Virus record (IMG/VR): IMGVR_UViG_3300037294_000266
Location: 202,647 to 266,646 of that record
Reading direction: 5' to 3' (one strand)
DNA: 64,000 nt
Part shown: one piece after another, positions 1 to 42,519 of the stretch
Numbering within the stretch: the stretch's first letter is position 1
How the letters are laid out: the number at the start of each line of letters is the position of its first letter
Notes under the pieces: model-generated
Database searches by the model: none
What the model was told of the DNA's origin: nothing
What the model saw: the letters and a program-made list of their open reading frames with translations, nothing else
Translations under genes and position numbers: made by a program

Positions 1-25
1 AGACGAGGTTGCCAGTTTAGCAGGA

Positions 26-6064: not shown

Positions 6065-6066
6065 CT

Positions 6067-6099
6067 CATAGGTGAGAGGGGCGACCCTCTCACCTTTAT
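6067..6099 (+). terminator. Hairpin after tail lysin gene
   Basis: aggtgagaggg-gcga-ccctctcacct followed by ttatttt. Confidence 0.7.
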
Positions 6100-6117
6100 T
6101 TTCTTCAGAGGTTAGGT

Positions 6118-26323: not shown

Positions 26324-26460
26324 TTATCGCCTTCTCCCACGATAATGGTATGCCAGTTGTTTGATATCTGTATTAAACACAGATTTGTTTAAAAAGAAAT
26401 GACTCAGATTCTAGGGCCAGGTTCGGCACCAGAACCGTGGAGATCCCAACGGAGACTGCA

Positions 26461-28854
26461 ATGAGCACTGTAATTCCAGATTATCCTTTTGATCCGACGG
26501 GTGTCGCTGAAACGAACTTGGTTGTTGAAACCCAGGCTATCGAATCACGCGGCACGTTCGACCATTACCATGTGGTCCCACGGGTCGCACCTTTCTTTGC
26601 TGAGAGTGTGAAACTCCGTCTTTACCCAATCGGCGCGAACGTCAATAACCCAGCTGGTGGAGAAGCTCTTGAAGAGGGCATCCACTACAACTTCGGTTAC
26701 CACTTCGCTTATGCATCGCATACCATTGGTAAGCCTGTATATAGCAGCATCACCTTCTATGACCGCACGTTGCGTGGTCAGTTGCGTATGGAATACCAGA
26801 CGCTGGGTGGTGAGTGGGTTCTCGATGAGCAGAAGTACAACGAACTTCTACTTAACGTATCTCGCAATCCTCGTATCGCCACCTGGGAACAGATGGTCGA
26901 ACTACCTCGGGAGTTTCCCGTTGTAGATCACGATTTCAACATCGACGATTTTGTCGGCATGACTGAAGTTGTGGACGAATTGGGTGACATCGAGCAAGCG
27001 ATCCTTCAATCAAACGAAGGTGGGTTGAACGACCATATTGAAAGTACTAATAATCCGCACTCAGTTACTAAAGACCAGGTAGGTCTTGGTCTGGTCGATA
27101 ACTTCCCTTCGGCAGCGCCGGGTGAAGCGACTGCTGGTGTGGCGAACAACCGCTTCATGACACCGCTTCGTACTAAGCAGGCCATTGATGCACTCATTCT
27201 GCCTCAATTGACGGCTCACATGGGCAACACAGCTAACCCTCACCAGGTTACCAAAGCCCAGGTAGGTCTTGGCAGTGTTCAGAACTTTGCATTGGCCACT
27301 CAAGCAGAAGCTGAGGCTGGTTCAAGCAATGCTCGGTACAGCACACCACTTCGTGTCCGTGAGGCTATTGAAGCTATTGTCGGTGTGACGCTCAATGCTC
27401 ACATGGCCGATCGTTCCAATCCCCATCAGGTTACGCGTGTACACGTCGGTCTCGGTAATGTTGAGAACATCGGCATTGCAACCGATGTGGCAGCGATCCA
27501 AGGTGCAGATGACAGTGGTGTAATCACTCCTCGTCTATTGTCACTCGTGCTTGCTGAAACGATTGGTGGTGGTGTTTCTGAGCACATTCAGGATTTCACC
27601 AATCCTCACGGTGTGACGAAGACTCAGGTTGGGTTGGGTTCGGTTGATAACTTCCCTTCTGCGTCTGAAGCTGAAGCCCGCGATGCCACGCTCAGCAACC
27701 GCTTCATGACTCCGCTGGCGGTTCGTCAGGCGATCAACGAACTGGTCGGTGACAGTTCCAACGCACACGTGACGGACTTCGACAACCCTCATCAGGTTAC
27801 AGCAGAACAGGTGGGTACTTATCCATCGGTAACTATCGATCAGCTACTGAGTGACAAGCTTGGTAATGACGAAGCGGCTGCTGACACCGAATTGGTGTAC
27901 GGACTGGATCAGACTGGGTTAGAAGCATGGATCGGCACCATCAAGTCTGGCGACTCTAGTCGTTTAGATGGCATGACTCGACCAGAACTGACGGCTGATA
28001 TCTTGTCAGGCACTGCTGCTAACTCGATTCTCTTTGGTGGGAAGACATACAGCGAAATCGTGAGCGAGATTGGCGACACTGTAGACGGAGCTTCTATTCA
28101 GTTCCGTGTACCGGCGATGCTGGAATTGCTTGATGAGTTTGATGTCGAGACAACAGCGCCTGAACACTGGATCAAGCTGGGTGACTTTGGCGGAACAATC
28201 AACGAACAGCCGGCTGACGTGACGTTGATGATTGCTGGTGGTCGCGACGACTCCTTGGGCGATGATCAAATCCAACAGACGATTCTTGTTCAGATTGCTG
28301 CGACGTACGATTACACCGATGGCGGTCCTCCATTTGCAATGCAATTGAAGAGCGCTGTGATTAAAGAAATCACTCCAGGACCAAAGCCGATCGAGATCGG
28401 TTATCGTTCAATTGGATCGGACGGTACTGCTAAGGTAGAAGTTTACCTGAAAAGTATCGGTACTCGTAACTCCTTGTCTGTCACCGAGCTGTCGTTCAAG
28501 CGATTCAATGCAGCAGCGCAGGTCCAGTACACCGAGGTTGCTCAACTGACCACCGTAGAGCCTGTAGGTATTATCTACCCACCACGCTTGAAGGAAGGTA
28601 CGGCTGAAATCCTCGAACTGTTGGATCACGCCGCTGACACGACCAATCCACATCAGACTACAAAAGATCAAGTAGGTCTTGGCAACGTCGACGATTACGC
28701 AACGGCCTCCCCGGCTGAGGCTGTAACAGGCACTGCGACCAATCGCTTCATGACACCCGCCACCACTACCTCTAAGGTAGATGATGCCATCGGTGTCCTC
28801 TGTGACGAACTGATCCTCGTTATCGATGATGCTTTGGATAACTTGTTTGTCTGA
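26461..28854 (+). CDS. Tail fibre protein (phiKZ gp146-like)
   Basis: N-terminal YPFDPTG; about six NPHxVTKxQVGLGxVDN...FMTP repeats. Start moved to MSTVIP. Confidence 0.8.
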   Translation: MSTVIPDYPFDPTGVAETNLVVETQAIESRGTFDHYHVVPRVAPFFAESVKLRLYPIGANVNNPAGGEALEEGIHYNFGYHFAYASHTIGKPVYSSITFYDRTLRGQLRMEYQTLGGEWVLDEQKYNELLLNVSRNPRIATWEQMVELPREFPVVDHDFNIDDFVGMTEVVDELGDIEQAILQSNEGGLNDHIESTNNPHSVTKDQVGLGLVDNFPSAAPGEATAGVANNRFMTPLRTKQAIDALILPQLTAHMGNTANPHQVTKAQVGLGSVQNFALATQAEAEAGSSNARYSTPLRVREAIEAIVGVTLNAHMADRSNPHQVTRVHVGLGNVENIGIATDVAAIQGADDSGVITPRLLSLVLAETIGGGVSEHIQDFTNPHGVTKTQVGLGSVDNFPSASEAEARDATLSNRFMTPLAVRQAINELVGDSSNAHVTDFDNPHQVTAEQVGTYPSVTIDQLLSDKLGNDEAAADTELVYGLDQTGLEAWIGTIKSGDSSRLDGMTRPELTADILSGTAANSILFGGKTYSEIVSEIGDTVDGASIQFRVPAMLELLDEFDVETTAPEHWIKLGDFGGTINEQPADVTLMIAGGRDDSLGDDQIQQTILVQIAATYDYTDGGPPFAMQLKSAVIKEITPGPKPIEIGYRSIGSDGTAKVEVYLKSIGTRNSLSVTELSFKRFNAAAQVQYTEVAQLTTVEPVGIIYPPRLKEGTAEILELLDHAADTTNPHQTTKDQVGLGNVDDYATASPAEAVTGTATNRFMTPATTTSKVDDAIGVLCDELILVIDDALDNLFV

Positions 28855-28923: not shown

Positions 28924-30498
28924 ATGAGTGTACCACCCATTATCCAGTATCCGTTCGACAGTTCTGGCGAATCGCTAACGAACAAAGTCGAGAATGAGCG
29001 GAGAACGATTGCTCTTAATACCGAGCGAGCGTTCGTCCCTGAAGCGGGTCCGTTTTACACCAGTTCGTTTAAAATCTGGAACGATGAGACCAATGAAGAA
29101 CTTCGTCCTGTCGACGATTACATTCTGGCTCAGCCGTTTTCCCAGGCATCTATCCGGACAGCAAAAGATGTTCAGTGCGCAATCATTCTGAAAGTACAAG
29201 CGCCTATCAGCGTTCGTTATACGTATCAGGTGGTTGGCGGTGAGTATTCATGGAACCTTCAGGGTCTTGCTGATCTCATTGCTGAACTCGATCTCGATGA
29301 ACGTCCTGTTAAATGGGGCGCTGTCATTGGTCGTCCTAACGCCTATCCGCCAGCTCCGCACATCCATGACATTGGCGATTCGTTTGGCTGGGAATATGTG
29401 GTATGGCAGCTTGAGCGCATTACCAATGCTATCTTGGTTGGTGATGAAGCATCGCACGATGAACTGCGTCAGCAGATGCAGACTATCCGCGATCAGTTAC
29501 AGGCTAACATCGATGCATTGGAAGCCAAGGTTGATGAACACATCAACGACTTTGACAATCCGCACCAAACCACGAAGGCTCAAGTGGGCCTTGGCCTAGT
29601 TGATAACTTCCAGACAGCCTCTCCTGCTGAAGCTTTGGCTGGCGTTCTCGGCAATCGGTTCATGACGCCTTCGCTGTCGAATAGCCTGGCTACTCGCATT
29701 GCGACTGAAGAAGTGGCAGAGCACGAAGCCCGTAAAGATAATCCACATGAAGTCACCAAGGCTCAGACCGGGCTTGGCAATGTGGACAACTTCATTACTG
29801 CCACCCGTGCAGAGGCTGAAGCCGGTACTCTCAATACCCGGTTCATGACGCCGTTGCGGACGAAGGAGGCAATTGATTTCATCGCAGGTAACTTGCTTCA
29901 AGCGCACGTTAACGATACCAACAACCCACACATCACTACCAAGGCTCAAGTCGGGCTTGGTTTGGTTGATAACTTCCAGACAGCTACCAAAGCTGAATCG
30001 GAAGCAGGTATCCTCAACAACCGCTTCATGACTCCGTTGCGTACTAAAGAAGCGATCAACTTCATCGCTGGTAACTTGATCAATGCTCACTTGGCTGACT
30101 TTGGCAACCCTCACCAGGTAACGAAGACGCAGGTCGGCTTGAGTAACATCCCGAACGCCATCACTCGTTCCCGTACTGCTAATACCAGTGCTGAACTATT
30201 GGTAGCTGGTGCGATGTATGACCATATCCTGTCTGGCGATCACGATAGCCGTTATGTCAAGATCAACGTGGCTCAGAATACATCTTTGCGGATCGTAGGA
30301 TCAACATTGCAGGGTTATGTGTCAGGCGCTTGGCGTCAGATCTGGCCAGCGACATGGACTGGTTATGTAACGCCAGGTGCAGCAGATCCATACCCAGGTA
30401 ACGCTACCGAGATTACTCTGATGAACGCGGGCGGTATTCTGTTCGCTTCTGTCAACGGTACGTGGCGTCAGGTGTGGCCAGCTCTCTGGAACGACTAA
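28924..30498 (+). CDS. Tail fibre protein (phiKZ gp145-like)
   Basis: N-terminal YPFDSSG; four NPHxxTKxQxGL repeats; duplicated Trp-rich C-terminal motif. Confidence 0.8.
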   Translation: MSVPPIIQYPFDSSGESLTNKVENERRTIALNTERAFVPEAGPFYTSSFKIWNDETNEELRPVDDYILAQPFSQASIRTAKDVQCAIILKVQAPISVRYTYQVVGGEYSWNLQGLADLIAELDLDERPVKWGAVIGRPNAYPPAPHIHDIGDSFGWEYVVWQLERITNAILVGDEASHDELRQQMQTIRDQLQANIDALEAKVDEHINDFDNPHQTTKAQVGLGLVDNFQTASPAEALAGVLGNRFMTPSLSNSLATRIATEEVAEHEARKDNPHEVTKAQTGLGNVDNFITATRAEAEAGTLNTRFMTPLRTKEAIDFIAGNLLQAHVNDTNNPHITTKAQVGLGLVDNFQTATKAESEAGILNNRFMTPLRTKEAINFIAGNLINAHLADFGNPHQVTKTQVGLSNIPNAITRSRTANTSAELLVAGAMYDHILSGDHDSRYVKINVAQNTSLRIVGSTLQGYVSGAWRQIWPATWTGYVTPGAADPYPGNATEITLMNAGGILFASVNGTWRQVWPALWND

Positions 30499-30519
30499 TG
30501 TAAAATGAGGACTCGCAAT

Positions 30520-31032
30520 ATGTTTAAACACATTCAGGATTTTTCATTCGAAGGTGTTGACCTGTCAGCACTGAGGATAGATGATCTCCTGTCGAGTCCT
30601 CTTCCTTACGAACTCGGGCTGCCCAGGTATCTCGAGTACGGCGGTACACATTCGTTGTTTAACGCAGCTGAATACTTCGAACACAGTCAGACGAAACCCA
30701 TTAAAGTAGAGGGGATAGAGAGACTCAGTGAATTACTGTACTCGACATCCCTTCGACTAGGCAGACACTTTAACCACACAGGTCCTGTGTCTTGCCACAT
30801 GTTCATCTCGCCTGCACAATCACTTAGTTTCCCAATGCATTCTGATACAGACGACGTAATCATCTACATGGTCAGCGGCCGTAAGGTTTATGAAGGTGTG
30901 GATGGGTCGTTAGAAGTGCGCGCTGGGGACAGTATCTATATTCCGCGTGGTACTTTGCACTGCGCGGTTAACACTGACGATTCCGTCATGCTCAGCTTTG
31001 GGCTTGAACGCTACCTGGAAGATAAATTGTGA
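30520..31032 (+). CDS. Cupin/JmjC-like Fe(II) oxygenase
   Basis: SFPMHSDTDDVIIYMVSGRKVY...GDSIYIPRGTLHCAV gives an H-x-D...H triad. Confidence 0.8.
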   Translation: MFKHIQDFSFEGVDLSALRIDDLLSSPLPYELGLPRYLEYGGTHSLFNAAEYFEHSQTKPIKVEGIERLSELLYSTSLRLGRHFNHTGPVSCHMFISPAQSLSFPMHSDTDDVIIYMVSGRKVYEGVDGSLEVRAGDSIYIPRGTLHCAVNTDDSVMLSFGLERYLEDKL

Positions 31033-32072
31033 GTACTCACAAGACGATCTATGTCAAGACGACCGGGACATGCAACCTTAACTGCCAACACTGCTTCACG
31101 AATGGGAAGAACGGGGATAAAACTCAGTTTGTACCGGAGGTAGTAGCCGGATGGGTACATGATTACATGGCTCAGCATTCAGCCGATACCAGTTACCACA
31201 TGGAGTTCCATGGCGGTGAGCCGTTCATTGTTCCATTGGAGAAGCTGAAACAGTTTGCTGATCATTTTGTTGACATGGAGAACGTTTCCATGTGTGCAAA
31301 CAGCAATCTGACGTTTAAGCTGACCGATGAGTTAATCGCATTCATCAAAGACTATCTTGGTGGGTACGTCGGCACCAGTTGGGACTATTGGATACGTTGG
31401 GGAAATGCTAAGCAGTTTGATCTCTGGAAGAAGAATCTGGAGACCCTGCGTTCGCACGGAATCGGCATCGGTGTTAAAGCATCGGTGAGCCGTCAGCTCA
31501 TCGAGAAATCGCCAGACTGGTTCATTGATCAGATGGAAGCGCTGGCTATCGAAGAAGTGAGTCTTGAACGCCTCACCAATGATGGCAGTGCCGTAGATCA
31601 CTCTGGGATCTTTCCTGACAATGAGGCGCAGGATAACTGGTACCTTGCACTGTATCTCCGTTACAAAGAACGAAACCCTCGGGTAAAGATAAAGACCCTT
31701 GACATCATCGAACAGAAGCTCATCCAGAACATTGTCAAAGTAGATACCAATTGTCGAAACTGTGAGCAGAACCTTGTCACGATGAATTCAGATGGGTCTC
31801 TTTCAGGATGTCCTAACGCAGCAGCTAGTCTTCATCATGCTAGAATCGATGAAGGGGTTGAAACGTTCCTTTCTTCAGATGGGCGTATTGATCAGATTGC
31901 AAAGGAATTATCTTGGGGAGACACCTGCCTCAACTGTGACGTATTTGATCTTTGTGGCGGTGATTGTCATCGCTTACCGTGGCAAGAAGGTCGCTGCGGT
32001 GGGTTAAAGAACACGCTGCGACATCTTTCTGGCAGACAGCCACAGCAAAACAACCTGATTATAAAGGTGTGA
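31029..32072 (+). CDS. Radical SAM/SPASM protein 1
   Basis: CNLNCQHC, FHGGEPF; SPASM-like CRNC...GCPN...CLNCDVFDLCGGDC...C. Confidence 0.92.
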   Translation: MSTHKTIYVKTTGTCNLNCQHCFTNGKNGDKTQFVPEVVAGWVHDYMAQHSADTSYHMEFHGGEPFIVPLEKLKQFADHFVDMENVSMCANSNLTFKLTDELIAFIKDYLGGYVGTSWDYWIRWGNAKQFDLWKKNLETLRSHGIGIGVKASVSRQLIEKSPDWFIDQMEALAIEEVSLERLTNDGSAVDHSGIFPDNEAQDNWYLALYLRYKERNPRVKIKTLDIIEQKLIQNIVKVDTNCRNCEQNLVTMNSDGSLSGCPNAAASLHHARIDEGVETFLSSDGRIDQIAKELSWGDTCLNCDVFDLCGGDCHRLPWQEGRCGGLKNTLRHLSGRQPQQNNLIIKV

Positions 32073-32073
32073 C

Positions 32074-32607
32074 ATGACTGAAATAATTACACGTAACCGA
32101 ATGGCCGTGAATGCCAACTCGTTGATTACCAATCGATGTAAAGCGGGCATTTCCTGGGGGACGAACAACTACCCAGCGAACTCCGATCCTGCTTGGTTTG
32201 CGGGCACTAACGCAGGCCCTGACGCTGCATTTGGCGGCTATCAGTTTTCAGCCGGAGTTGCTAACGCACAGCAGGCGATCGACGTACTTAAATATGTCTC
32301 TAATCTATTTGCCAGTGTCCGAACCACTCGAATTGTAATTTACATGTCTCACTTCTCGCTGGGGCAGACTGTTGTTTCCGATAACACTGCAGTTGCTTGG
32401 ATCAATGCGCCTGCGGCTTTCAGTAATAACGTGGGAATGTGGTTTGCATCGGGATATGACATGGATCTTAACGCGTTTAATAACTCGTGTGAGGCTATCT
32501 ACAGTGCATATCTAGCAACGTGCCGTTATCAGACCGCTACGTTCACCCGAACCATTTGCCACACTAGCTGTCATAGCAGCTGTCATAGCAGCCGAGGCCG
32601 CCGATGA
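32074..32607 (+). CDS. 177-aa protein with C-terminal (CHxS)3 repeat; candidate radical SAM substrate
   Basis: Ends TICHTSCHSSCHSSRGRR. Asn/Ala/Gly/aromatic-rich body resembles a virion protein. Function is inference. Confidence 0.7.
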   Translation: MTEIITRNRMAVNANSLITNRCKAGISWGTNNYPANSDPAWFAGTNAGPDAAFGGYQFSAGVANAQQAIDVLKYVSNLFASVRTTRIVIYMSHFSLGQTVVSDNTAVAWINAPAAFSNNVGMWFASGYDMDLNAFNNSCEAIYSAYLATCRYQTATFTRTICHTSCHSSCHSSRGRR

Positions 32608-32657
32608 CATGTCATGTAAGTGCCATCAAACGGTCTAGAGAAGCAACTGGAGAACCC

Positions 32658-33440
32658 ATGGAACAGACTACTGAAGAAACCAAACCAGGCGGGGCGGTCA
32701 TCGACGGGCCGGTGATTGTCATTGAAACCACAGCCAATATTCCAATGGACTTACTTAAACGTAAGTTCAAAGAGAATATTGAGTTTGTCATCGATGTGGA
32801 CAACAGTCGTCTTAAAGGCGACATGCTGCTCACCTATCTGTCAAACCTCAAGCTTAACTGCAAGCTAAAGTTTGGTAGTCTCGAATCGTCTCTCGAACTC
32901 CTGTCGTCGTATTTAAAGATGTCTACGGTCATGTCGATTCCAGAATTGGAAGACCTGGCCATGAACATCATGCTGGCAGCGTATGGTAAAGATCATTACT
33001 GTCAATTCGATCCGACTGAGTTCATTCGTGACAACTCAGACATGATCGACGTGTGGCTCCGGCGGATGTGTGCACTCCCTTTGTTTGCATTACACTGTCA
33101 TCCAACGACCAAGGATTTTGTTTCTCAATTCCCAGTCGATGAAGACCATGAGCTGCACGGTATCAACTACGTGCAACTGATCAAGCACGAACTGTTCCCA
33201 GAATTCATCAATGACTTCAATCAAGAAGACATGTCGTACAACAGGTTATTGTTCAACGAATACTGTTTTGCAGGGCTGAACCTGTTTAACTATTTCGCGA
33301 TCCCCAATAACCCGTTGTTTGTGGGACTGATGGTACTCGACAAACCAGAACACCTCGAAGTGCTCATGGCTGCTGCTCATACGACTTACGTGACTGCTGA
33401 AACGATCATGAAGGAGCTCGAACATGTACCATCTGTGTAA
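32658..33440 (+). CDS. Hypothetical protein of the radical SAM cluster
   Basis: 260 aa from ATG 32658 (RBS ggag); no recognised motif. Confidence 0.65.
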   Translation: MEQTTEETKPGGAVIDGPVIVIETTANIPMDLLKRKFKENIEFVIDVDNSRLKGDMLLTYLSNLKLNCKLKFGSLESSLELLSSYLKMSTVMSIPELEDLAMNIMLAAYGKDHYCQFDPTEFIRDNSDMIDVWLRRMCALPLFALHCHPTTKDFVSQFPVDEDHELHGINYVQLIKHELFPEFINDFNQEDMSYNRLLFNEYCFAGLNLFNYFAIPNNPLFVGLMVLDKPEHLEVLMAAAHTTYVTAETIMKELEHVPSV

Positions 33441-34470
33441 ATCGATTTACGTCGATAGCGAACACCGCATCGACCGTAATAAAGATGTGATCACAATCTC
33501 TCCAAAGATCGGGTTTGAACACATCGCTGAAGAGAAAGGTGTGCAGATCGGTTATGCTACAAGTCTGGATGAGTTGTCTCCTGAAGCGTTAGAGGCGATG
33601 CTCAACAAAGGTCTTGCTGCCGATGACCGTGTGACCGTCTATTGTGACGGTAAGACGTACTTGCGTCTTTACACCATGTTGATAAAGGCTGTATTGCCGA
33701 ACTTAACACTGGATCTGTTCCGATGGATCATGCTGTGTAAGAAGGCTACTTTCAATACGACTATCGTTGCAGGCGGCGAGCCTAACGTGGATGTGTTGGC
33801 CAGTATCCAGATCAATAACAAGGTCTGTCACGAGCTCTTCATGGAAGCCAGTACTCTGCAACCAGTGATCGATGCACTGGTCAATGAGAACCCAGACTTC
33901 CTTTCGCTGGAATGGCGCTTGATTCGTCTGCGTACTGAAGGTCGTGTCGGTAAGATCCCAGGTGTACTCAACAACATCCTGCGTCGCATTGCTCTGAGCA
34001 ATGCTCATGATGCCATGGACGTCTGGGGTCGTCATCTGACCCGCGAGAAGAACTGGGACATCGCTGGCGCTGATCTCGATACGCTTCTGAACGCACCCAC
34101 TGTGTTCGAAGGGTGTTTGAACATGCCGCACTTGGCGAGTCAACAACTCCTGCGTCCTGGTCTGTATGATTTCTCACCGACCAAGCCCTGGATCATCGGC
34201 ATGCTGCGTGAGGCCGTAGGTCTGATGGAAGTCCTTGAGGACGAGTCATCTGCTAAACGCGCTGCTCACATTCTTGAGCTGTTTAGTTCACCTGTCAATT
34301 TACGTGAGTCTGATGCATGCTTGCAGCGTGTTGTTGATATGTTTGCAGGTGAGATGCGCATTGCACTGGCTTTCAAGGATACTGGCAAATACGACGAGAA
34401 CTTGATTCGGTTCATTCTCGAATCAGATATCGAAGTGCTCAAAACTTCTCTTGAAGGGGCTGAATGGTAA
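33424..34470 (+). CDS. Hypothetical protein of the radical SAM cluster
   Basis: 348 aa, overlapping both neighbours. Confidence 0.65.
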   Translation: MYHLCKSIYVDSEHRIDRNKDVITISPKIGFEHIAEEKGVQIGYATSLDELSPEALEAMLNKGLAADDRVTVYCDGKTYLRLYTMLIKAVLPNLTLDLFRWIMLCKKATFNTTIVAGGEPNVDVLASIQINNKVCHELFMEASTLQPVIDALVNENPDFLSLEWRLIRLRTEGRVGKIPGVLNNILRRIALSNAHDAMDVWGRHLTREKNWDIAGADLDTLLNAPTVFEGCLNMPHLASQQLLRPGLYDFSPTKPWIIGMLREAVGLMEVLEDESSAKRAAHILELFSSPVNLRESDACLQRVVDMFAGEMRIALAFKDTGKYDENLIRFILESDIEVLKTSLEGAEW

Positions 34471-35462
34471 TGGACTTAATTCCCGTATTGAACATACTCG
34501 AGCAAAAGAAAGGTAAGTTGAAAGAAGCTCACCTCATTCTGTTCGAGTACTGTAATTTACGGTGTTCGTTCTGCCACCAGGACCACGAATCCAGAATCGG
34601 CATCAATACGATCCAGCAGAAAGTAGACACACTCATTGCCAACTCAAACCCACGTGATGCCTACGTGTTGAATTTGACTGGCGGTGAGTTATTTCTTGAT
34701 GAGTTCAGCGATGGGCTCTTTGAGGAATACTACGAAGCCGGTAAACGTCTCTTAGAACACTTCGACGATGCGTTGCTGGTGCTGGGTACCAATCTGATCT
34801 ATCACAATGTAGCGCGGGTCATCAAGCTGGTCAATCGCTTAAAGCGATATGGTCGTGTGCAACTTGCCACGTCTTACGATCCAGCAGGACGATTCAACGC
34901 AGAACAACGGACACTGTTCTTCAAGAACCTTATCCATGTTCGTGACCTTGTACGCACGGTCAATGTGGTTATCACCAAGCAGAACATCCAGTCGTTTCTG
35001 GATGGACATGAAGGTGCCGAGTTCAAGTGGATGTGCGAACACTTTGACGTGTACTTCGATCATTACATCCCAAGTCAGATGTACGAGTATATCCAGCCGG
35101 ATGAAGACCTAATCAGTCAGCTCTACATGCACCTGAACAAACACTACCCAGACTCGTATCCGATCAAGGACTGGAAGAACAATGTGGAGAATACCACCAC
35201 TTGTCGATCCACTAAGATCATCAATAAGGATAATGTCGTGACCACCTGTTGGTCAGAAGCTGGGAAAGACTCTATCTTGGACGAGCAAGAAGGTTTGCTA
35301 GCCAAGGATGAGGCCGAGTTGCGGTTCCTTGAGAAATACGACTGCTTTGCCTGTGAGTTCTACTCGCGATGCGGGATGCGATGTTTCTTGCATCATTCGT
35401 TTGTGGATGATGGACTTGACAATGTCTGTCAGATAAAAACGATGTTCAGAGCCATCCTGTAA
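34464..35462 (+). CDS. Radical SAM protein 2
   Basis: CNLRCSFC, LTGGELF, ATSYDPAGRF; C-terminal CRS...TTC...CFACEFYSRCGMRC...C. Confidence 0.9.
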   Translation: MVMDLIPVLNILEQKKGKLKEAHLILFEYCNLRCSFCHQDHESRIGINTIQQKVDTLIANSNPRDAYVLNLTGGELFLDEFSDGLFEEYYEAGKRLLEHFDDALLVLGTNLIYHNVARVIKLVNRLKRYGRVQLATSYDPAGRFNAEQRTLFFKNLIHVRDLVRTVNVVITKQNIQSFLDGHEGAEFKWMCEHFDVYFDHYIPSQMYEYIQPDEDLISQLYMHLNKHYPDSYPIKDWKNNVENTTTCRSTKIINKDNVVTTCWSEAGKDSILDEQEGLLAKDEAELRFLEKYDCFACEFYSRCGMRCFLHHSFVDDGLDNVCQIKTMFRAIL

Positions 35463-35467
35463 TACGT

Positions 35468-35499
35468 CATAGAGACCGGGCTGATGCCCGGTCTCTATG
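35468..35499. terminator. Bidirectional hairpin
   Basis: Perfect 14-bp stem catagagaccgggc-tgat-gcccggtctctatg. Confidence 0.8.
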
Positions 35500-35507
35500 T
35501 TGAGTCG

Positions 35508-36566
35508 CTAGGTCACTGCAGCGCACAGATCTTTTACACCCGATGGTGTCAGGTAACGTTCGGTTCCGAAGAGGTCATTGATGATGTTAGAGATGAACTG
35601 TTTGTGTAGGTTAGCGACTGTATTTGCTGGAACGCCTTTTATGCCGAATTGATTACAGTATTCGAACACCCCCCATTTCTTATCTTTGGTTACGAATAGA
35701 TCCAAAGAACTGAGAGGACCTATCACGTCCCGCGCCAATGCGCTTAAATCGTGAATTTGTTTAGAGGACAGCACCGACTCGATGGAAACAATGTCTTCAC
35801 CAAGGATACTGTTTGTGTTCGATCCTGATGCTTGGGGAAACCCATCGGCATTGTAGACATTACGTTTCTGGACGTAAGCGATCTCGCTCTGCGCGCCAGT
35901 GATTATACGGTACTCAGATTCAATATTGTCAACAAACGATTGAATCGAATAACCTTGGGTTTTTAGACCAGACAGGCCTTCATCGACGTGATGTTCGCCG
36001 CGTGTAGAATAAGCCATATCCGGATCGTACTTATTCAGCTCTTCAAACAGTTCTTTGCTGGTAGACATGCCCTTGATGTACTTATCAAGAGCTTCAATCA
36101 TTACAGCAAATGGAATCTTATCAGTATCGACAAGAAACTGTCCTATTCCACGAGCTCCGTCGTTAGGCTTGATGACTACCTTACCACTCGGGTTGACAAG
36201 ACTACTGAGTCCCAGTGCTTGGGAGTGCACCCATGATTTAATTTTGACGAAGTCGTCATCGTTAAACTGTAACCGCCCAGCAGTGCGCTTGACATAGTTG
36301 TTGATCCGCATTGCCTGTTCGGTTTTACTATACCGGCGATTTACGAACACCATATGTGGTGGCAGTATGCGCTCAGCAGCGATCTCATTGATCTTTAAAG
36401 TGCCGTCACTGATCATGAAATCAAAGTTGAAATGCTCCTCTCCATCAATGACGCTAAGTTGAGGGTCGTTGTGGAAGAATATTTGTTTATTGTTAATGAC
36501 AATGCCTTGATGCAGCACCCAGAAATTGTTCATGAACTTACTAACAACGATATATACACGTTCCAT
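35508..36566 (-). CDS. ATP-grasp (RimK-like) ligase
   Basis: VVIKPNDGARGIG, IQSFV..EYRII, SLDLF...GVFEYCNQFG. Start moved to MERVYI (RBS aggag). Confidence 0.75.
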   Translation of the reverse strand: MERVYIVVSKFMNNFWVLHQGIVINNKQIFFHNDPQLSVIDGEEHFNFDFMISDGTLKINEIAAERILPPHMVFVNRRYSKTEQAMRINNYVKRTAGRLQFNDDDFVKIKSWVHSQALGLSSLVNPSGKVVIKPNDGARGIGQFLVDTDKIPFAVMIEALDKYIKGMSTSKELFEELNKYDPDMAYSTRGEHHVDEGLSGLKTQGYSIQSFVDNIESEYRIITGAQSEIAYVQKRNVYNADGFPQASGSNTNSILGEDIVSIESVLSSKQIHDLSALARDVIGPLSSLDLFVTKDKKWGVFEYCNQFGIKGVPANTVANLHKQFISNIINDLFGTERYLTPSGVKDLCAAVT

Positions 36567-36657
36567 CGGAGACTCCTGATGTTTAGACCATATAAGACCA
36601 CAGGTAAGTAAAACATAACGATACAATCCCTATGTAATCTTTAATGCTGAGGTCGAC

Positions 36658-36906
36658 ATGGCAGTCTTTAAAGTAGGGCAAACTGTTTGGGCTGGTAAAA
36701 TACTCTCCACAGATGCATGCGGTGACCATCCTGCATTTCTACATGCACGAAAGGGCGACGAGTTAATTGTAATAGCTCACGACGATGATCGCGTTTATCC
36801 CTACAGCGTAGCGGATAATCCAGAAGGTAAAGAATCTTTCCGTGCTGCGGCATCTGATCTGATGGGTCAGAAACCATTCAAGCATAACATCGAACAAGGC
36901 TGGTGA
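36658..36906 (+). CDS. Small hypothetical protein (SH3-like beta fold possible)
   Basis: 82 aa, RBS gagg; FKVGQTV...KGDELIV pattern. Confidence 0.6.
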   Translation: MAVFKVGQTVWAGKILSTDACGDHPAFLHARKGDELIVIAHDDDRVYPYSVADNPEGKESFRAAASDLMGQKPFKHNIEQGW

Positions 36907-36910
36907 GTCC

Positions 36911-37078
36911 ATGACAACTATCTTCGACACGCAAGACAAACCTTTCAAGCCACTTGAGAAAGATGACGAGTGGCTGTACCAGAAGATGAAGGAGCAGCAA
37001 GCGTCTGGTGATGTACGTCGAGATTTCCACAATGAATGGCTTGCACAGCCACCTGTTATCGAAACATCTGAGGACTGA
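36911..37078 (+). CDS. Small hypothetical protein, 55 aa (not in ORF track)
   Basis: MTTIFDTQDKPFKPLEKDDEWLYQKMKEQQASGDVRRDFHNEWLAQPPVIETSED fills the gap exactly between neighbours. Confidence 0.55.
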   Translation: MTTIFDTQDKPFKPLEKDDEWLYQKMKEQQASGDVRRDFHNEWLAQPPVIETSED

Positions 37079-37081
37079 TCT

Positions 37082-38170
37082 GTGGATGTTATAGTTAAAC
37101 CGACCGTTGCTTGTAATTTTAAGTGTACATTCTGTTCGAGTACTCATTTATCAGAAAACCCAACAGATATCGTAGAGCTCTCTACGCTTAAGCAGTTTAT
37201 CCAGCGCTTCCCAGAAACCAATACCGTGATCGTCAATGGTGGAGACCCGCTCATGATGCCTCCTGAGTATTACTGGGAGATGATTAAGATGCTGGATGAA
37301 CTTGATAGTCATGCGAGCATCAGTTTCACCAGTAACCTCTGGCCTTTCTACAAGAAGCCTGAGATATGGGAAGAGTTATTCAAACATGATCGCCTAGGTA
37401 TCACGACTTCTTTCCAATACGGTGACAAGCGCCTCAAAGGCGACAAGTCAGTCTTCACAGAAGAAGACTTCAGGAATGTCAGTGACATGTTCCTTGAACG
37501 CATTGGTTACCGTCCTAGCTTCATTGCCGTCATTGACAAGGACAACGAGCACACTGTCTTGGACACGGTTCGTCTGGCTAAGGAAATGGGTGTTGAAGCC
37601 AAGATCAACCACGTTGTTGCTTCAGGACCCGAAGTGGATAATCGTGGCATCATCATGGGCAGTCAGAATAACTTCTTCACTCAGGCGGATATCTACCGTC
37701 ATTATGTCCAGATCTACGATGCCGGTCTGATGGAGTGGGAATACAACACCAAACAGATGGCTAAGAAGCTTAAGGGATTGGCCACTACCTGTCCGTTAGC
37801 ACGGAACTGCGACAGTGGTATTCGAGCATTGCAGCCTGGCGGTGGTTATTATTCATGTGGGTCGTTTGGTGATGATGGCGAACATCCCATTGACTTCGAA
37901 GCAGAGATGGCCGGCGAGTTCTTCACCCCACTGCAATACGAAGCCGACTTAGACTCGATGAAAGAGTCGTGCTACACATGCCCTATGTTCAGTATTTGTA
38001 ATGGCTGTCGTAAAACCATTGCAGACACCAAGCGAATGGGACTTGTAGAACATCATTGCAAAACCATGAAAGAGATTGCTCCACGGATCATCGATATCAA
38101 CGGACTGACCGGTAAGGTATTTCCAACGCCATACGTTGACGAATCAGTGCAGCTCATTGCTAAGGCATAA
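37082..38170 (+). CDS. Radical SAM/SPASM protein 3
   Basis: CNFKCTFC, VNGGDPL; CPLARNC...YSCGSF...CYTCPMFSICNGC...HC. Confidence 0.92.
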   Translation: MDVIVKPTVACNFKCTFCSSTHLSENPTDIVELSTLKQFIQRFPETNTVIVNGGDPLMMPPEYYWEMIKMLDELDSHASISFTSNLWPFYKKPEIWEELFKHDRLGITTSFQYGDKRLKGDKSVFTEEDFRNVSDMFLERIGYRPSFIAVIDKDNEHTVLDTVRLAKEMGVEAKINHVVASGPEVDNRGIIMGSQNNFFTQADIYRHYVQIYDAGLMEWEYNTKQMAKKLKGLATTCPLARNCDSGIRALQPGGGYYSCGSFGDDGEHPIDFEAEMAGEFFTPLQYEADLDSMKESCYTCPMFSICNGCRKTIADTKRMGLVEHHCKTMKEIAPRIIDINGLTGKVFPTPYVDESVQLIAKA

Positions 38171-38173
38171 TTC

Positions 38174-39100
38174 ATGACAAAGCCTAAAATAAATATCAGT
38201 ATCAACCCGTGGTATTTCTGTAATTTTAAATGTGACTTCTGCTACTTGACTCCTGAGCAATTAGGGGATCGAAAGCGTCTTGACCTCGAGACACTCGAAC
38301 AACGGCTCGATGAACTCCTGCAACATTACGTTATCGGACACATCGATCTATATGGTGGTGAAGTATTACTACTGCCTGAAGAATACATCAATGCTATCCG
38401 TGACATGTTACACGTCCGAGGTATTGATGACTTGGTTCTGGTTACTAACCTGTCTCATCTCCACCCAGTCGTTCACGAGAAGGATTGGGAAATATCGGTC
38501 TCGTATGACTTTGATGCTCGTGAGAAACATGAACATGTGTTACAGAACATGCTTCTCATGACACAACCTTTCAGTATCTTGTCTCTGGCAGGGCGCCAGT
38601 TTCTCGATAAGGTTACTCCAGACATCTACGTCGACACGATGAATATGTTTGGTAATCTGAAAGGTTGTGAGATCAAACCTTACAGTAGTAACCAAGCCAA
38701 CGACCAGCCTGTGACGTACCGAGAATACGAAGAGTTTGTCTGGGCAGTGATTGATCATCCGGCTCGTAACTTCTACTTTGAGAACGCCACTCAGGTTGAA
38801 GAAGCATTTGAAGGCACTCGTAATTCATTCAGCGATGACCACATCTACATCACACCTGAAGGTAAGTTTGCAGTACTGGAGTTCGATGACAATGATCATG
38901 AATTCTTTATGCCACTGGAATCGATTGCAGAGTACCAACAGTGGTGTGTAATCGAGAAGAGCCGTGTTAATGTCAATCCGATCTGTTCGGCATGTCCTTA
39001 CAACGGATCTTGTCTCTCTGAACACCTTCGTAATGTAACGTCCCTCGATAATTCCTGTAATGGGTTCCGAGGACTCATTGATAAATGGGGTGCATCGTGA
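38174..39100 (+). CDS. Radical SAM protein 4
   Basis: CNFKCDFC, LYGGEVL; CSACPYNGSCLSEH...SC. Confidence 0.9.
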   Translation: MTKPKINISINPWYFCNFKCDFCYLTPEQLGDRKRLDLETLEQRLDELLQHYVIGHIDLYGGEVLLLPEEYINAIRDMLHVRGIDDLVLVTNLSHLHPVVHEKDWEISVSYDFDAREKHEHVLQNMLLMTQPFSILSLAGRQFLDKVTPDIYVDTMNMFGNLKGCEIKPYSSNQANDQPVTYREYEEFVWAVIDHPARNFYFENATQVEEAFEGTRNSFSDDHIYITPEGKFAVLEFDDNDHEFFMPLESIAEYQQWCVIEKSRVNVNPICSACPYNGSCLSEHLRNVTSLDNSCNGFRGLIDKWGAS

Positions 39101-40149
39101 AAGCTCAACATCTTGAAGTAGAACACAGGCAGCGCCTGGAGATCACTCTCGACATCTTTCGAGGGTGTGGTCATAGCTGCTCAGGCTGCATGATCAATAC
39201 GTCGCTGGGTGGGGATGTCAACGACATTCCTGAACTCCATGCACTGATCAGTGAAATGGTTGACGTTGGGTATGTGGCGTTTGATCTCGGTGTAGGTCCT
39301 ACTGATTACATGTCTGCAGACAACACCGCCGAGGTCATGGACCATCCGGTCTTTCAAGAGATGGCGCAGAAATTCCATCAGGTTACGTTCAACGCAGCGT
39401 TCCTTGAGAAAGACATGGAGAAGTATAGGTCGATGTGCGAAGACATTGACCTGGCACTCCCTGGTAAATCTATACGCTTCTTAATTCCGGCAGCGCCTCC
39501 ATTTTTCAAGACACACAAGTTTGGCGACATGATTGAATCCAAACTTGAGTTCGTGAAGGATAATCTACATAGCGCTTACCTGAATGAAGCTGGCTTTGTG
39601 GTTAACTGCACGGCAGACACTGTGGGTGATGACTTTGAGGCCATGATGAATAATGGCTTTGATATTGAATTCCCTGTTGATAAGGATGATATCTTGAATA
39701 TCCCTTACGGTCGAGCGCCTGTAAAGGATCTGATGACGGCACAGCACATCAAGCGGATGTCTCATCGCATCACTCAGTTCTATTCAACACTGAATGGTAC
39801 AGATGAGCGTCGTCGCAATCCTGATCTCTGCTACCACACCGGTACCATGGTCAATCTCCTGTACACCGGCGGTAAGCTTTACTGGGTGCCTTTCCTTAAA
39901 GACGACTGCGCGTTCCTTGAAGATGCTTTCTCTGTGTCGAAGCCCTGGTCTATGGATAATCTCCTAAAGACTCGTCAGGCGGCTCTAGAGAGCGCTCTAG
40001 ACTACCTTAAGGACACGCCGTGCATGACCTGTCCTTATCTGAGCAGTTGTTCAGAGAAAGGTATCATTAACATCATGGAACACATGCAGATCCGTGATTG
40101 TCTAGTTGGGTTAGAACATGTTAAATCAACCGCAGAGTCCAGCGTTTAA
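39097..40149 (+). CDS. Divergent radical SAM-like protein 5
   Basis: CGHSCSGC; GGE replaced by GPTD; CMTCPYLSSC...DC. GTG start overlaps the upstream TGA. Confidence 0.75.
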   Translation: MKAQHLEVEHRQRLEITLDIFRGCGHSCSGCMINTSLGGDVNDIPELHALISEMVDVGYVAFDLGVGPTDYMSADNTAEVMDHPVFQEMAQKFHQVTFNAAFLEKDMEKYRSMCEDIDLALPGKSIRFLIPAAPPFFKTHKFGDMIESKLEFVKDNLHSAYLNEAGFVVNCTADTVGDDFEAMMNNGFDIEFPVDKDDILNIPYGRAPVKDLMTAQHIKRMSHRITQFYSTLNGTDERRRNPDLCYHTGTMVNLLYTGGKLYWVPFLKDDCAFLEDAFSVSKPWSMDNLLKTRQAALESALDYLKDTPCMTCPYLSSCSEKGIINIMEHMQIRDCLVGLEHVKSTAESSV

Positions 40150-41098
40150 TCTGACCCTTGAGATTCTACAGGGGTGTAAGTACAACTGCGTAGGCTGTAT
40201 GGTCGATAAAGACTACGAGCCTCTTATTCCATTTGACCAGGACACGGATAAGATCCTTGAAATGGTCGATGCGATGAAAGCTGAAGGGTATCGGACTCGA
40301 GAGTTTACAATCGGGCCAGTGGATGTCATCAGCTCGAAGACAGGGGATTCGATATTCGATCATCGCTTGATTAAGGGGCTGGCTGAGCGGTTTGAATCTG
40401 TCGTCATTCCGTTAGCACTGATGAAAGGGAAGTCGTTTACACTGGCCACTCCTTTCCAGCTAAAGAGTACTGACAACCCTAAACACGTCGATCTAATAAA
40501 GCGTCGTGTGATGTTCATCCAAGCGTCATTGCCTGACGTTAAATTTGAGCTACTGTACATTACCGTTAACATGATTGGCGATGCAGTAGATGCATTTGAT
40601 GTTGCATTAAACCGAAGACTCCATGATATTGATTTTGGTGTCAGACGACTCATTGAGTTTGTATTCCCTCACCCTAGAAAGGGGTTGGATAATTTACTCA
40701 TGCAGAACTTGTTTAAGCGCAACTTCGGACATTTCTGTGACGTCATTAAACAGTGTAAGAACACTGATCTAAATCGTCATCTCATTAAACCAGCTGATGA
40801 TAGCTACGAAACAACCTATCGTGATGGCAGACTGTATTACACACCGACACTGATCGAGAAGTTTCCTATATTCGATCCGATGTTTGAAATAACGTCTCCA
40901 TGGACTCTCGAGAAGATAGAGCTGTTCAAGATGGATCTCTATCTAGACAGTCTGGTTAAATATTCAGTGAGCGGACCGTGCAGTAAGTGTTGTAATTTAA
41001 GTAAGTGTGCTGAGGGCGATGTTCACTCCATCATGACTCATTTGAATGACTCGACTTGTCTGGTATCTCTTTATAACGACTGGAGTGTGATAACGTGA
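40118..41098 (+). CDS. Divergent radical SAM-like protein 6 (paralog of protein 5)
   Basis: CKYNCVGC; GPVD in place of GGE; CSKCCNLSKC...TC. Confidence 0.75.
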   Translation: MLNQPQSPAFNLTLEILQGCKYNCVGCMVDKDYEPLIPFDQDTDKILEMVDAMKAEGYRTREFTIGPVDVISSKTGDSIFDHRLIKGLAERFESVVIPLALMKGKSFTLATPFQLKSTDNPKHVDLIKRRVMFIQASLPDVKFELLYITVNMIGDAVDAFDVALNRRLHDIDFGVRRLIEFVFPHPRKGLDNLLMQNLFKRNFGHFCDVIKQCKNTDLNRHLIKPADDSYETTYRDGRLYYTPTLIEKFPIFDPMFEITSPWTLEKIELFKMDLYLDSLVKYSVSGPCSKCCNLSKCAEGDVHSIMTHLNDSTCLVSLYNDWSVIT

Positions 41099-41532
41099 GT
41101 AAGGAAGAACAGCTTACTTTTATTCAGTTAGAACAGATGCCTTTTCCAGATTGGCTGATAGACGCTGTCCTTTGTGAACCTAACAAAGCGTTCATTGAGA
41201 CAGCGTCTATCAACGACTACGTCAACAGCATCATACTGCCAATTGTTGCTGATGAACTCAACTGGCCAGACAATCTGCAAGTGACAGCAAACCATGTCCA
41301 TTGTAGCAGTGACGGACTCGAGCCACACGACCATCTCCCTCACGAATACACTTCAGTACTCTATCTCATTGATGCCGAAGGTGATCTGATTGTTCATGAC
41401 GATGGCGAACACCGTGTCACGCCAGCAGAAGGTCGGTTTGTTCTGATGGACGCTCGTCTTAAACACAGTGTTGAACCATCCAACTGCATGCGTATTTCTC
41501 TGGTGACCAACTATGCAACCACCTGCCTATAA
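41095..41532 (+). CDS. 2OG-Fe(II) oxygenase-like protein
   Basis: PHDHLPHEYTSVLYL...GRFVLMDARLKHSV...MRISLVTN. Confidence 0.75.
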   Translation: MSKEEQLTFIQLEQMPFPDWLIDAVLCEPNKAFIETASINDYVNSIILPIVADELNWPDNLQVTANHVHCSSDGLEPHDHLPHEYTSVLYLIDAEGDLIVHDDGEHRVTPAEGRFVLMDARLKHSVEPSNCMRISLVTNYATTCL

Positions 41533-42507: not shown

Positions 42508-42519
42508 GAAGTACGTACA

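What the first reader, a model, noticed from the sequence alone, without database searches (positions are those of the whole stretch)
30300..30498. Tail fibre ends in a duplicated Trp-rich motif instead of a globular receptor-binding tip
Seen: STLQGYVSGAWRQIWPATW and GILFASVNGTWRQVWPALWND, two copies of G-x-W-R-Q-x-W-P-A-x-W at the extreme C-terminus, immediately upstream of the cluster. Established: T-even fibres bind separate adhesins (gp38) at their tips. Inference: these modules may dock a separately encoded tip protein such as the CHxS protein, or their Trp residues may themselves be rSAM/oxygenase substrates.
Basis: inference. Interest (0 to 1): 0.6.

Follow-up and report, generated by a model that had tools for sequence, protein, structure and literature searches.

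The report
Conserved Trp-rich cap on phage fibre
The fibre protein of this jumbo phage ends in two copies of a small, previously undescribed Trp-rich module, and in every relative that could be checked but one lineage the gene carrying this module sits right next to a cluster of radical-SAM protein-modifying genes, so the two are probably linked in function, though how is not shown.

Summary
The 524-aa fibre (window 28924-30498, +) ends in two copies of G-x-W-R-Q-x-W-P-A-x-W.

The copies are an old tandem duplication of a ~40-aa module I call the W-cap. Relatives such as Ralstonia phage RSF1 carry one copy, 1-2 residues before the stop. W, W-P and W are invariant across the relatives first collected.

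AlphaFold2 models each unit as a three-stranded beta-meander at moderate confidence. Pfam and the PDB hold no match.

A profile search of 1.84 billion proteins found only 51 clusters, nearly all phage fibre-like. In at least five different gene contexts, including 109-138-aa mini-proteins, a radical-SAM gene follows the W-cap gene directly or within a few kb. In three contexts a protein with a Cys-His (or Cys-Asn) repeat tail is clearly there too.

The reverse does not hold. Of 79 loci with that cassette, 32 have a W-cap fibre upstream and 35 have a fibre ending in a Peptidase_G2-like chaperone domain.

One relative keeps an intact W-cap fused to an extra domain, and keeps the cupin, but lacks the radical-SAM genes at the syntenic site.

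Best reading: a structural C-terminal cap that is genetically coupled to the cassette. Neither docking of the 177-aa protein nor Trp modification is shown or excluded.

The parts
28924..30498 (+). Fibre gene (524 aa). It has an N-terminal anchor domain shared with the upstream 805-aa fibre, a shaft of NPH-x-x-TK-x-Q-x-GLG-type repeats, and a C-terminal double W-cap.
   Evidence: phrog_2163 'virion structural protein', E 2e-128, plus tail-fibre PHROGs. The RSF1 homologue is annotated as a putative virion structural protein.
30238..30363 (+). W-cap unit 1 (residues 439-480): a D-H-D-x-R-Y preamble, a three-stranded beta-meander and the W470/W474-P475/W478 motif. It corresponds to the single terminal unit of one-copy relatives.
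   Evidence: (strands at residues 454-458, 461-466, 469-474; block pLDDT about 80).
30352..30402 (+). Pro/Gly-rich linker between the two units, modelled as disordered.
   Evidence: pLDDT below 50 at model residues 78-94, i.e. protein residues 477-493.
30370..30495 (+). W-cap unit 2 (residues 483-524): linker plus an appended second beta-meander carrying W514/W518-P519/W522. It lacks the D-H-D-x-R-Y preamble.
   Evidence: It is present only in the subclade with the window, DT01, L003-L011 and P0005-P0018.
26437..28854 (+). Paralogous 805-aa fibre. It shares the N-terminal anchor and shaft repeats, has a larger non-repeat region, and has no W-cap.
30505..31032 (+). Cupin / JmjC-like oxygenase, 6 nt after the fibre stop. 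It is kept next to the W-cap fibre even in the relative that lacks the radical-SAM genes.
   Evidence: Cupin_2 E 2e-10, JmjC_2 E 2e-9.
31029..32072 (+). Radical-SAM/SPASM peptide-maturase-like enzyme, the first of six in the window cluster.
   Evidence: The nearest NCBIfam models are cyclophane-forming, ranthipeptide and sulfatase maturases, all far below cut-off. The SPASM domain scores 26.4 bits against a cut-off of 27.
32074..32607 (+). 177-aa protein: a confidently modelled alpha/beta domain plus a low-confidence tail of three Cys-His-x-Ser units ending R-G-R-R. It is the invariant companion of the radical-SAM gene and the more likely enzyme substrate.
   Evidence: (pLDDT 88, tail below 50-67).
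32604..43071 (+). Rest of the cluster: two unknown proteins, five more radical-SAM genes (34464-35462, 37082-38170, 38174-39100, 39085-40149, 40118-41098) and three 2OG-Fe(II) oxygenase-like genes (41095-41532, 41944-42507, 42520-43071). A variable 372-aa gene on the minus strand (35508-36626) interrupts it.

Best explanation
The duplicated motif is the core of a small folded module of about 40 residues, which I call the W-cap. It consists of a D-x-R-Y preamble, a three-stranded antiparallel beta-meander, and a last strand and tail carrying W-x-Q-x-W-P-x-x-W.

The module closes the C-terminal end of a family of phage fibre proteins. Its aromatic residues and the Pro most likely pack as the hydrophobic core of the meander and of the presumed trimer end. 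It would then act as a C-terminal folding or registration cap, in the way other fibres use a foldon or a C-terminal chaperone domain (inferred).

The ancestral state is one terminal copy. The lineage of this window and of Pseudomonas phage pPa_SNUABM_DT01 added a linker and a second copy behind it (shown).

The module is also the fibre-side partner of the adjacent radical-SAM/SPASM plus Cys-His-repeat cassette. The genetic coupling is shown. Its nature is inferred: it may be the surface that a cassette product recognises or sits on.

The disordered Cys-His tail of the 177-aa protein, not the folded W-cap, is the more likely radical-SAM substrate (inferred).
For: Conservation:
- W, W-P and W are invariant and G and Q nearly so in 37 units from fibres whose remaining sequence is 30-45% identical.
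- More distant members substitute W by F, Y or L but always keep P. That is the pattern of a packed core.

Fold:
- AF2 models both units as the same three-strand meander, block pLDDT about 75-81.
- The Cys-His tail of the 177-aa protein is modelled without confident structure.

Position:
- The unit ends 1-2 residues before the stop in about 40 of the 51 protein clusters found among 1.84 billion representatives.

Alternative termini:
- Among 79 cassette loci the upstream fibre ends either in a W-cap (32) or in a Peptidase_G2-like intramolecular-chaperone domain (35), never both. The W-cap thus occupies the place of a known folding domain.

Independence from the enzymes:
- In L056/L141 the radical-SAM and Cys-His genes are absent from the syntenic interval, yet the motif is intact, as W-R-I-V-W-P-P-Q-W, and now internal.

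Coupling:
- The W-cap gene is followed by the cassette in the RSL2/DT01-like lineage and in L050, L052, L058/L059 and L053. L057 shows a similar next gene but the contig ends. N-termini and upstream genes differ in all of these.

Duplication:
-.
Against: - The fold comes from a monomer model of only moderate confidence (mean pLDDT 66.6, pTM 0.31). No trimer model was obtained.
- No solved structure or profile matches the module, so the cap function rests on position and conservation alone.
- A purely structural cap does not by itself explain why 109-147-aa mini-proteins with a W-cap head the radical-SAM operon.
- Invariant Trp at the distal end of a fibre could equally be a ligand-binding platform.
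- The rest of the L056 contig could not be read, so the cassette may lie elsewhere in that genome.
Confidence: 0.45

Rival explanations
1. Docking platform. The W-cap trimer is the attachment site for a separately encoded distal protein made by the cassette, most obviously the 177-aa Cys-His-tail protein after maturation. That protein would form the real tip of the fibre, as gp38 does on T2-type gp37.
For: - Strict W-cap to cassette adjacency across at least five gene contexts.
- Conservation of the fibre end across phages of Pseudomonas, Ralstonia and Burkholderia suits a phage-encoded partner better than a host receptor.
- In the one relative without radical-SAM and Cys-His genes, a 157-aa beta-rich domain is fused directly behind the W-cap, as if replacing a detachable tip.
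- The 177-aa protein has a well-folded domain of no recognisable fold.
Against: - The cassette and its Cys-His protein occur just as often behind fibres with no W-cap.
- The fused extension is not homologous to the 177-aa protein.
- The gene directly after the fibre is usually an oxygenase, not a structural protein.
- There is only one replacement case.
- No evidence that the 177-aa protein is in the virion.
Confidence: 0.2
2. Substrate. The motif residues are themselves modified by cluster enzymes before folding. Candidates are W-R-Q, W-P-A and W-x-x read as three aromatic-X-X units, or the conserved Arg/Gln. The chemistry could be cyclophane-type C-C cross-links by a radical-SAM/SPASM enzyme, or hydroxylation by the JmjC-like cupin. 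The result would be a cross-linked, protease-resistant fibre end.
For: - Radical-SAM cyclophane synthases act on 3-5-residue aromatic motifs, including three W-P-R motifs in WprA (PMC11851443).
- The best, though far sub-threshold, NCBIfam neighbours of the first and third radical-SAM proteins are cyclophane-forming maturases.
- The W-cap sits at the extreme C-terminus directly upstream of the enzymes, like a RiPP core peptide, including in 109-138-aa proteins.
- The cupin stays with the W-cap fibre even where the radical-SAM genes are gone.
Against: - The same enzyme set occurs without any W-cap.
- The motif stays intact where the radical-SAM genes are absent.
- The module is modelled as folded, whereas the Cys-His tail is flexible and universally present, which makes the tail the more natural substrate.
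- In many one-copy proteins only one residue follows the last Trp, so no +2 partner exists there.
- Distant members replace the first Trp by Leu.
Confidence: 0.12
3. Receptor-binding aromatic platform. The exposed Trp residues bind a conserved host surface polymer (a glycan, or the flagellar filament) directly. The second copy raises avidity. Adjacency to the cluster reflects only a shared late operon.
For: - Trp-rich beta-hairpin repeats are common carbohydrate binders (general knowledge).
- A Chiangmaivirus, S13, whose relative RSF1 carries a one-copy W-cap fibre, depends on flagella (PMC11898562). S13's own fibre end was not read.
- The module lies at the distal end of a fibre.
Against: - Receptor-binding tips normally diverge with the host, yet this one is invariant across several host genera.
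- It does not explain repeated co-transfer with the cassette into different gene contexts.
- No Pfam carbohydrate-binding or cell-wall-binding repeat matches even at E 10.
- The paralogous 805-aa fibre has the larger variable domain expected of a receptor binder.
Confidence: 0.15

Closest known systems
T4 fibritin foldon (C-terminal trimerisation hairpin)
   Same: A very small C-terminal beta-hairpin-based module at the end of a phage fibre with a conserved Trp after a Gly turn. The proposed role as folding or registration cap is the same. The foldon comparison is from memory of its sequence and structure and is a lead only.
   Different: - No detectable sequence relation. A W-cap profile finds nothing in the PDB even at E 10, although the PDB (to my knowledge) holds many foldon-tagged chains.
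- Three strands and three aromatic positions plus an invariant Pro.
- Occurs as a tandem pair here.
- Trimerisation is untested.
Peptidase_G2 intramolecular-chaperone C-terminal domain of tail spikes and fibres (Pfam PF11962, phi29 gp12 type)
   Same: It occupies the same position: the C-terminus of the fibre gene that precedes the radical-SAM/Cys-His cassette. It is mutually exclusive with the W-cap.
   Different: - Much larger (about 150-230 aa) and self-cleaving.
- No sequence similarity to the W-cap.
- Nothing suggests the W-cap is removed.
T2/T6-type gp37 tip with separately encoded adhesin gp38
   Same: A conserved fibre end followed by accessory genes. The docking idea is analogous.
   Different: - No homology to gp37 or gp38.
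- The downstream genes are oxygenases and radical-SAM enzymes plus a Cys-His-tail protein.
- Binding has not been shown (one search gave no answer).
Radical-SAM cyclophane RiPP precursors (triceptides; WprA with three W-P-R motifs)
   Same: Repeated aromatic-X-X units at a C-terminus next to SPASM-type radical-SAM genes.
   Different: - Here the motif is part of a 524-aa structural protein and is modelled as folded.
- The enzymes are far below every family cut-off.
- The enzymes occur without the motif.
His-Xaa-Ser system (HxsA repeats with paired radical-SAM HxsB/HxsC)
   Same: This concerns the neighbouring 177-aa protein, not the fibre. Its tail has His-x-Ser units next to several radical-SAM genes, and there are weak HxsB/HxsC hits.
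   Different: - The invariant residues are Cys-His, and the Ser position varies.
- The hits are orders of magnitude below cut-off.
- The setting is a phage fibre locus.

Membership tests
Foldon-like C-terminal trimerisation cap | Located at the extreme C-terminus of a fibrous phage protein | tested here: met
   It lies 1-2 residues before the stop in about 40 of 51 clusters and in all one-copy loci.
Foldon-like C-terminal trimerisation cap | Small beta-hairpin fold with a buried conserved aromatic residue | tested here: inconclusive
   The AF2 monomer model gives a three-strand meander per unit at pLDDT about 75-81, with overall pTM 0.31. Burial was not assessed.
Foldon-like C-terminal trimerisation cap | Sequence or structural similarity to fibritin foldon | tested here: not met
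   No PDB sequence hit at E 10 with the unit profile. Foldseek found nothing at E 0.001 or better.
Foldon-like C-terminal trimerisation cap | Drives trimerisation | not testable with these tools
   The only complex job gave no verdict and no interface. This needs biochemistry or a dedicated trimer model.
gp37/gp38-type fibre tip with separate adhesin | Homology to gp37 tip or gp38 | tested here: not met
   The Pfam, PHROG and NCBIfam scans give only generic fibre-repeat families.
gp37/gp38-type fibre tip with separate adhesin | Physical binding of a downstream-encoded protein to the fibre end | tested here: inconclusive
   The complex prediction gave 'no answer'. Comparative data show adjacency only.
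Radical-SAM cyclophane (triceptide / WPR-type) substrate | Repeated aromatic-X-X motif in the precursor | tested here: met
   W-R-Q, W-P-A and W-x-x with one-residue spacers, in two copies. The last unit often lacks a +2 residue in one-copy relatives.
Radical-SAM cyclophane (triceptide / WPR-type) substrate | Cognate maturase belongs to a cyclophane-synthase family | tested here: not met
   The best hits are AmcB at 53.6 bits (cut-off 425) and DynA at 48.7 bits (cut-off 450).
Radical-SAM cyclophane (triceptide / WPR-type) substrate | Motif and enzyme co-occur in both directions | tested here: not met
   The motif implies the cassette in all but one well-covered lineage. The cassette occurs without the motif in 47 of 79 loci and in Atu_ph07.
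Radical-SAM cyclophane (triceptide / WPR-type) substrate | Cross-link present in the mature protein | not testable with these tools
   Needs mass spectrometry.
Peptidase_G2 intramolecular chaperone domain | Match to PF11962 | tested here: not met
   No Pfam hit for the W-cap region at E 10. Fibres at W-cap-less cassettes do hit it.

The most novel reading that the evidence does not exclude
The W-cap and the Peptidase_G2-like domain are two alternative fibre ends recognised by a widespread, undescribed phage system. In this reading, several radical-SAM/SPASM enzymes and oxygenases mature a Cys-His-repeat protein, and possibly the fibre end itself, into a covalently cross-linked fibre-tip component. 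Phage adsorption organelles would then be finished by RiPP-type chemistry.
Probability: 0.25. Interest if true: 0.85.

Novelty: new variant of a known kind. Interest (0 to 1): 0.6.

Why it matters
Phage fibres are known to be finished by chaperones and self-cleaving domains. They are not known to be finished by radical-SAM chemistry.

This work defines a compact module with no Pfam or PDB counterpart. The module marks a fibre family and travels with a radical-SAM/SPASM cassette across unrelated phage backbones. The same cassette also pairs with chaperone-ended fibres in dozens of viral contigs.

That makes a concrete question testable in cultured phages (pPa_SNUABM_DT01, RSL2/RSF1, FLC6/FLC8, S13, Atu_ph07): what do six radical-SAM enzymes do at a tail-fibre locus? 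The papers found treat these genes only as annotations or as 'DNA repair / metabolism' genes.

If the W-cap proves to be an autonomous trimerisation unit, it could also serve as a small fusion tag.

Tried and rejected
- Complex prediction of three copies of the fibre C-terminus (125 aa) with the 177-aa protein as partner gave 'no answer' (run scores 0.01, 0.41, 0.00 against a mark of 0.32). It counts neither for nor against binding.
- The megablast search of the locus against phage records found nothing. Relatives were found only at protein level.
- Pfam at E 10 on the C-terminus found nothing.
- PDB sequence searches with the whole fibre and with the unit profile found nothing.
- Foldseek on the fibre C-terminal model gave only E above 1. 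The top rows were tail fibres of Agrobacterium phages 7-7-1 and Milano and collagen XVIII trimerisation domains. None is significant, and I use none as evidence.
- The fold of the 177-aa protein stayed unexplained. Foldseek, VIA-align (best Z 5.2, within noise) and the ESM Atlas (scores 0.81 or lower) gave no usable match.
- I tested whether the fused extension in L056 is a relative of the 177-aa protein. It is not (hhalign probability 0.1%).
- I tested whether one radical-SAM paralogue (window 39085-40149) is specific to W-cap cassettes. It is not, because it also occurs in several chaperone-type cassettes.
- The promoter and terminator scan of the locus was at or near shuffle level and uninformative. 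No terminator-like site lies between fibre and cupin.
One walk of 10 kb was done instead.
- Six literature searches found no paper linking these fibres to the cluster.

Full report
**What is there**

The window is the last 64 kb of a complete 266,646-bp virus record. Its closest named relative is Pseudomonas phage pPa_SNUABM_DT01, and more distantly the Chiangmaiviruses of Ralstonia and Burkholderia (RSL2, RSF1, FLC6/8, S13).

The ORF at 28924-30498 (+) encodes a 524-aa fibre. Its N-terminal domain is shared with the preceding 805-aa fibre (phrog_2163). A shaft of four NPH-x-x-TK-x-Q-x-GLG-type repeats follows. The end carries G-A-W-R-Q-I-W-P-A-T-W at residues 468-478 and G-T-W-R-Q-V-W-P-A-L-W at residues 512-522, two residues before the stop. 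The cupin gene starts 6 nt after the stop.

It is not chance:
- Unit against unit scores z 10.5 over 2000 shuffles.
- The pattern is unique in the window.
- A profile of the unit hits only these two places in the whole genome.

**The unit and its duplication**

Aligning relatives shows a module of about 40 residues. It has a D-H-D-x-R-Y preamble, a variable hairpin region, then G-x-W-(R/Q/K)-Q-x-W-P-x-x-W. W, W-P and W are invariant in 37 units from the window and viral contigs.

RSF1 and about 23 IMG/VR contigs have one unit ending 1-2 residues before the stop. The window, DT01 and a subclade (L003-L011, P0005-P0018) have a second unit behind a Pro/Gly-rich linker. Unit 1 keeps the preamble and aligns with the sole unit of one-copy relatives. 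Unit 2 lacks the preamble. So a second unit was appended to an ancestral one-unit end. With 55% nucleotide identity between the copies, the event is old.

**Fold**

An AF2 model of the last 125 residues (34-sequence alignment) gives the same three-stranded antiparallel meander for each unit. The first part of the motif is the third strand. Block pLDDT is about 75-81 in the units and below 50 in the linker. Overall pLDDT is 66.6 and pTM 0.31, as expected for a monomer model of a presumably trimeric fibre.

Nothing known matches the module: not Pfam at E 10, not PDB sequences at E 10, and not Foldseek at a useful E-value.

**How far the module reaches**

A profile search of 1.84 billion representative proteins found 51 clusters at E 0.001 or better. 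About 40 of them have the unit at the very C-terminus. Most share the 'Y-P-L-D-L-T-G' anchor of the window's fibre and range from 294 to 932 aa. A few have other N-termini or are tiny (91-208 aa). Distant members replace W by F, Y or L but keep the Pro.

**Link to the cluster**

In every jumbo-phage locus with enough flank, the genes for cupin, radical-SAM enzyme, Cys-His-tail protein and further radical-SAM enzymes follow the W-cap fibre. L035 has a diverged radical-SAM set 3.7 kb downstream.

That is one lineage with fixed synteny, so I looked for other contexts:
- **L050:** a 375-aa W-cap protein sits behind T4-like replication genes. A radical-SAM gene and a 191-aa protein with the Cys-His tail follow it directly.
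- **L052:** a 464-aa W-cap protein sits behind baseplate genes. A 122-aa protein with a Cys-Asn repeat tail follows, then radical-SAM genes.
- **L058/L059:** a 109-aa protein with a degenerate cap heads an operon of five radical-SAM genes plus a Cys-His-tail protein.
- **L053:** a 138-aa W-cap protein is followed by an ORF with the CxxxCxxC motif.
- **L057:** a 147-aa W-cap protein is followed by an ORF resembling L052's repeat protein, but the contig ends there.
- **L055:** a possible exception, on a contig of only 1.6 kb.

The W-cap thus travels with the cassette, which supports a functional link.

**The reverse direction**

Searching viral contigs with the 177-aa family returned 79 loci. 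Of these:
- 32 have a W-cap ORF upstream.
- 35 have an upstream fibre or spike ending in a domain that matches, or nearly matches, Pfam Peptidase_G2. This is an intramolecular chaperone domain (L086 30.6 bits and L130 27.1 bits against a cut-off of 25).
- None has both.
- 12 have neither, and several of these are truncated.

Agrobacterium phage Atu_ph07 is of the chaperone type and has no W-cap anywhere in its 490 kb. The cassette is therefore a fibre-associated module that works with two alternative fibre ends. Its enzymes cannot depend on the Trp motif.

The invariant element is the tail of the small protein: Cys-His-x-x repeated, ending R-G-R-R. It is expanded in L012 and L023. The tail is modelled as flexible behind a confident alpha/beta domain (pLDDT 88).

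The radical-SAM proteins are SPASM-type. Their nearest neighbours, all far below threshold, are cyclophane-forming, ranthipeptide and sulfatase maturases.

**A natural counter-example**

In L056/L141 the fibre homologue is 42% identical through the first motif. It keeps W-R-I-V-W-P-P-Q-W and continues into a 157-aa beta-rich extension. The cupin follows. No radical-SAM or Cys-His gene lies in the next 19 kb, where synteny resumes with homologues of window genes at 48-59 kb.

So the motif stays conserved where the enzymes are missing at the expected site. This favours a structural role. The fused domain is compatible with the idea that something normally sits on the cap, but it is a single case, and the extension is unrelated to the 177-aa protein.

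**Interpretation**

I rank the readings as follows:
1. A structural C-terminal cap that is also the fibre-side partner of the cassette (0.45).
2. A docking site for the matured Cys-His protein (0.20).
3. A direct receptor platform (0.15).
4. A substrate of the radical-SAM or cupin enzymes (0.12).

The substrate idea has a chemical precedent: WprB cross-links Trp to Arg at three W-P-R motifs (PMC11851443). Three things weaken it. The cassette is independent of the motif. The motif persists without the enzymes. The module is predicted to be folded.

**Literature**

The papers on DT01, FLC6, RP12/RP31 and S13 list the radical-SAM, cupin and 2OG genes only as annotations. [quoted passage not shown] No paper found connects them to the fibre. 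S13, a Chiangmaivirus, needs flagella for infection, and its receptor-binding proteins are unidentified.

**Limits**

- No trimer model, no expression data and no proteomics were available.
- Many contigs are fragments.
- Locus counts include near-identical contigs.
- The foldon comparison rests on memory and failed the one test available.

Noticed in passing
window 32074-32607; L012:9867-10571; L023:9843-10526; L052:11677-12045: The 177-aa family always ends in Cys-His-x-x repeats followed by R-G-R-R (R-S-R-R in Atu_ph07 and L058). L012 and L023 carry expanded repeat arrays. L052 has a Cys-Asn repeat version ending T-R-G-I-M. It looks like a large-leader RiPP-type precursor. HxsB/HxsC (His-Xaa-Ser system) give weak hits to the neighbouring radical-SAM proteins.
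   Followed up: partly
L111, L122, L123, L125, L126, L128, L130, L133 (about 5650-6600 in each): In many smaller viral contigs, two tandem 124-140-aa Cys-His-tail paralogues directly follow a long fibre (up to 1,948 aa) that ends in a Peptidase_G2-like domain. Four to six radical-SAM paralogues lie nearby.
   Followed up: partly
L002:9178-10095 (RSF1 ORF068); L035:8600-9661: A GIY-YIG nuclease gene is inserted between the W-cap fibre and the cluster in RSF1, and on the opposite strand in L035. It is probably a homing endonuclease and is absent from the window.
   Followed up: no
window 35508-36626 (-): A 372-aa gene on the opposite strand interrupts the radical-SAM cluster. Homologues were seen in only four related loci (L003, L004, L030, L031), so it looks like a variable insertion. 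No Pfam or PHROG match.
   Followed up: no
L056:10001-11929 (P0035 residues 486-642): A 157-aa beta-rich domain is fused behind an intact W-cap in the one relative lacking the radical-SAM genes at the syntenic site. No Pfam match, and unrelated to the 177-aa protein.
   Followed up: partly
window 26437-28854 and 28924-30498: The two adjacent fibres share the N-terminal anchor domain and shaft repeats, so they probably compete for or share a baseplate site. Only the shorter one has the W-cap. The longer one has a roughly 250-aa non-repeat region (about residues 470-720).
   Followed up: no
window 41095-41532, 41944-42507, 42520-43071: Three 2OG-Fe(II) oxygenase-like genes close the cluster. Together with the JmjC-like cupin at its start, that makes four oxygenases and six radical-SAM genes in about 12.5 kb.
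   Followed up: partly
records G004, G005, G007, G008, G011: Matches to the radical-SAM protein of window 39085-40149 in several complete relatives are reported with one in-frame TGA or TAG. Most likely the match runs over a gene boundary, but I did not check.
   Followed up: no
window 2-6064 (+): An open-ended ORF of more than 2,000 aa lies at the start of the window. I did not examine it.
   Followed up: no
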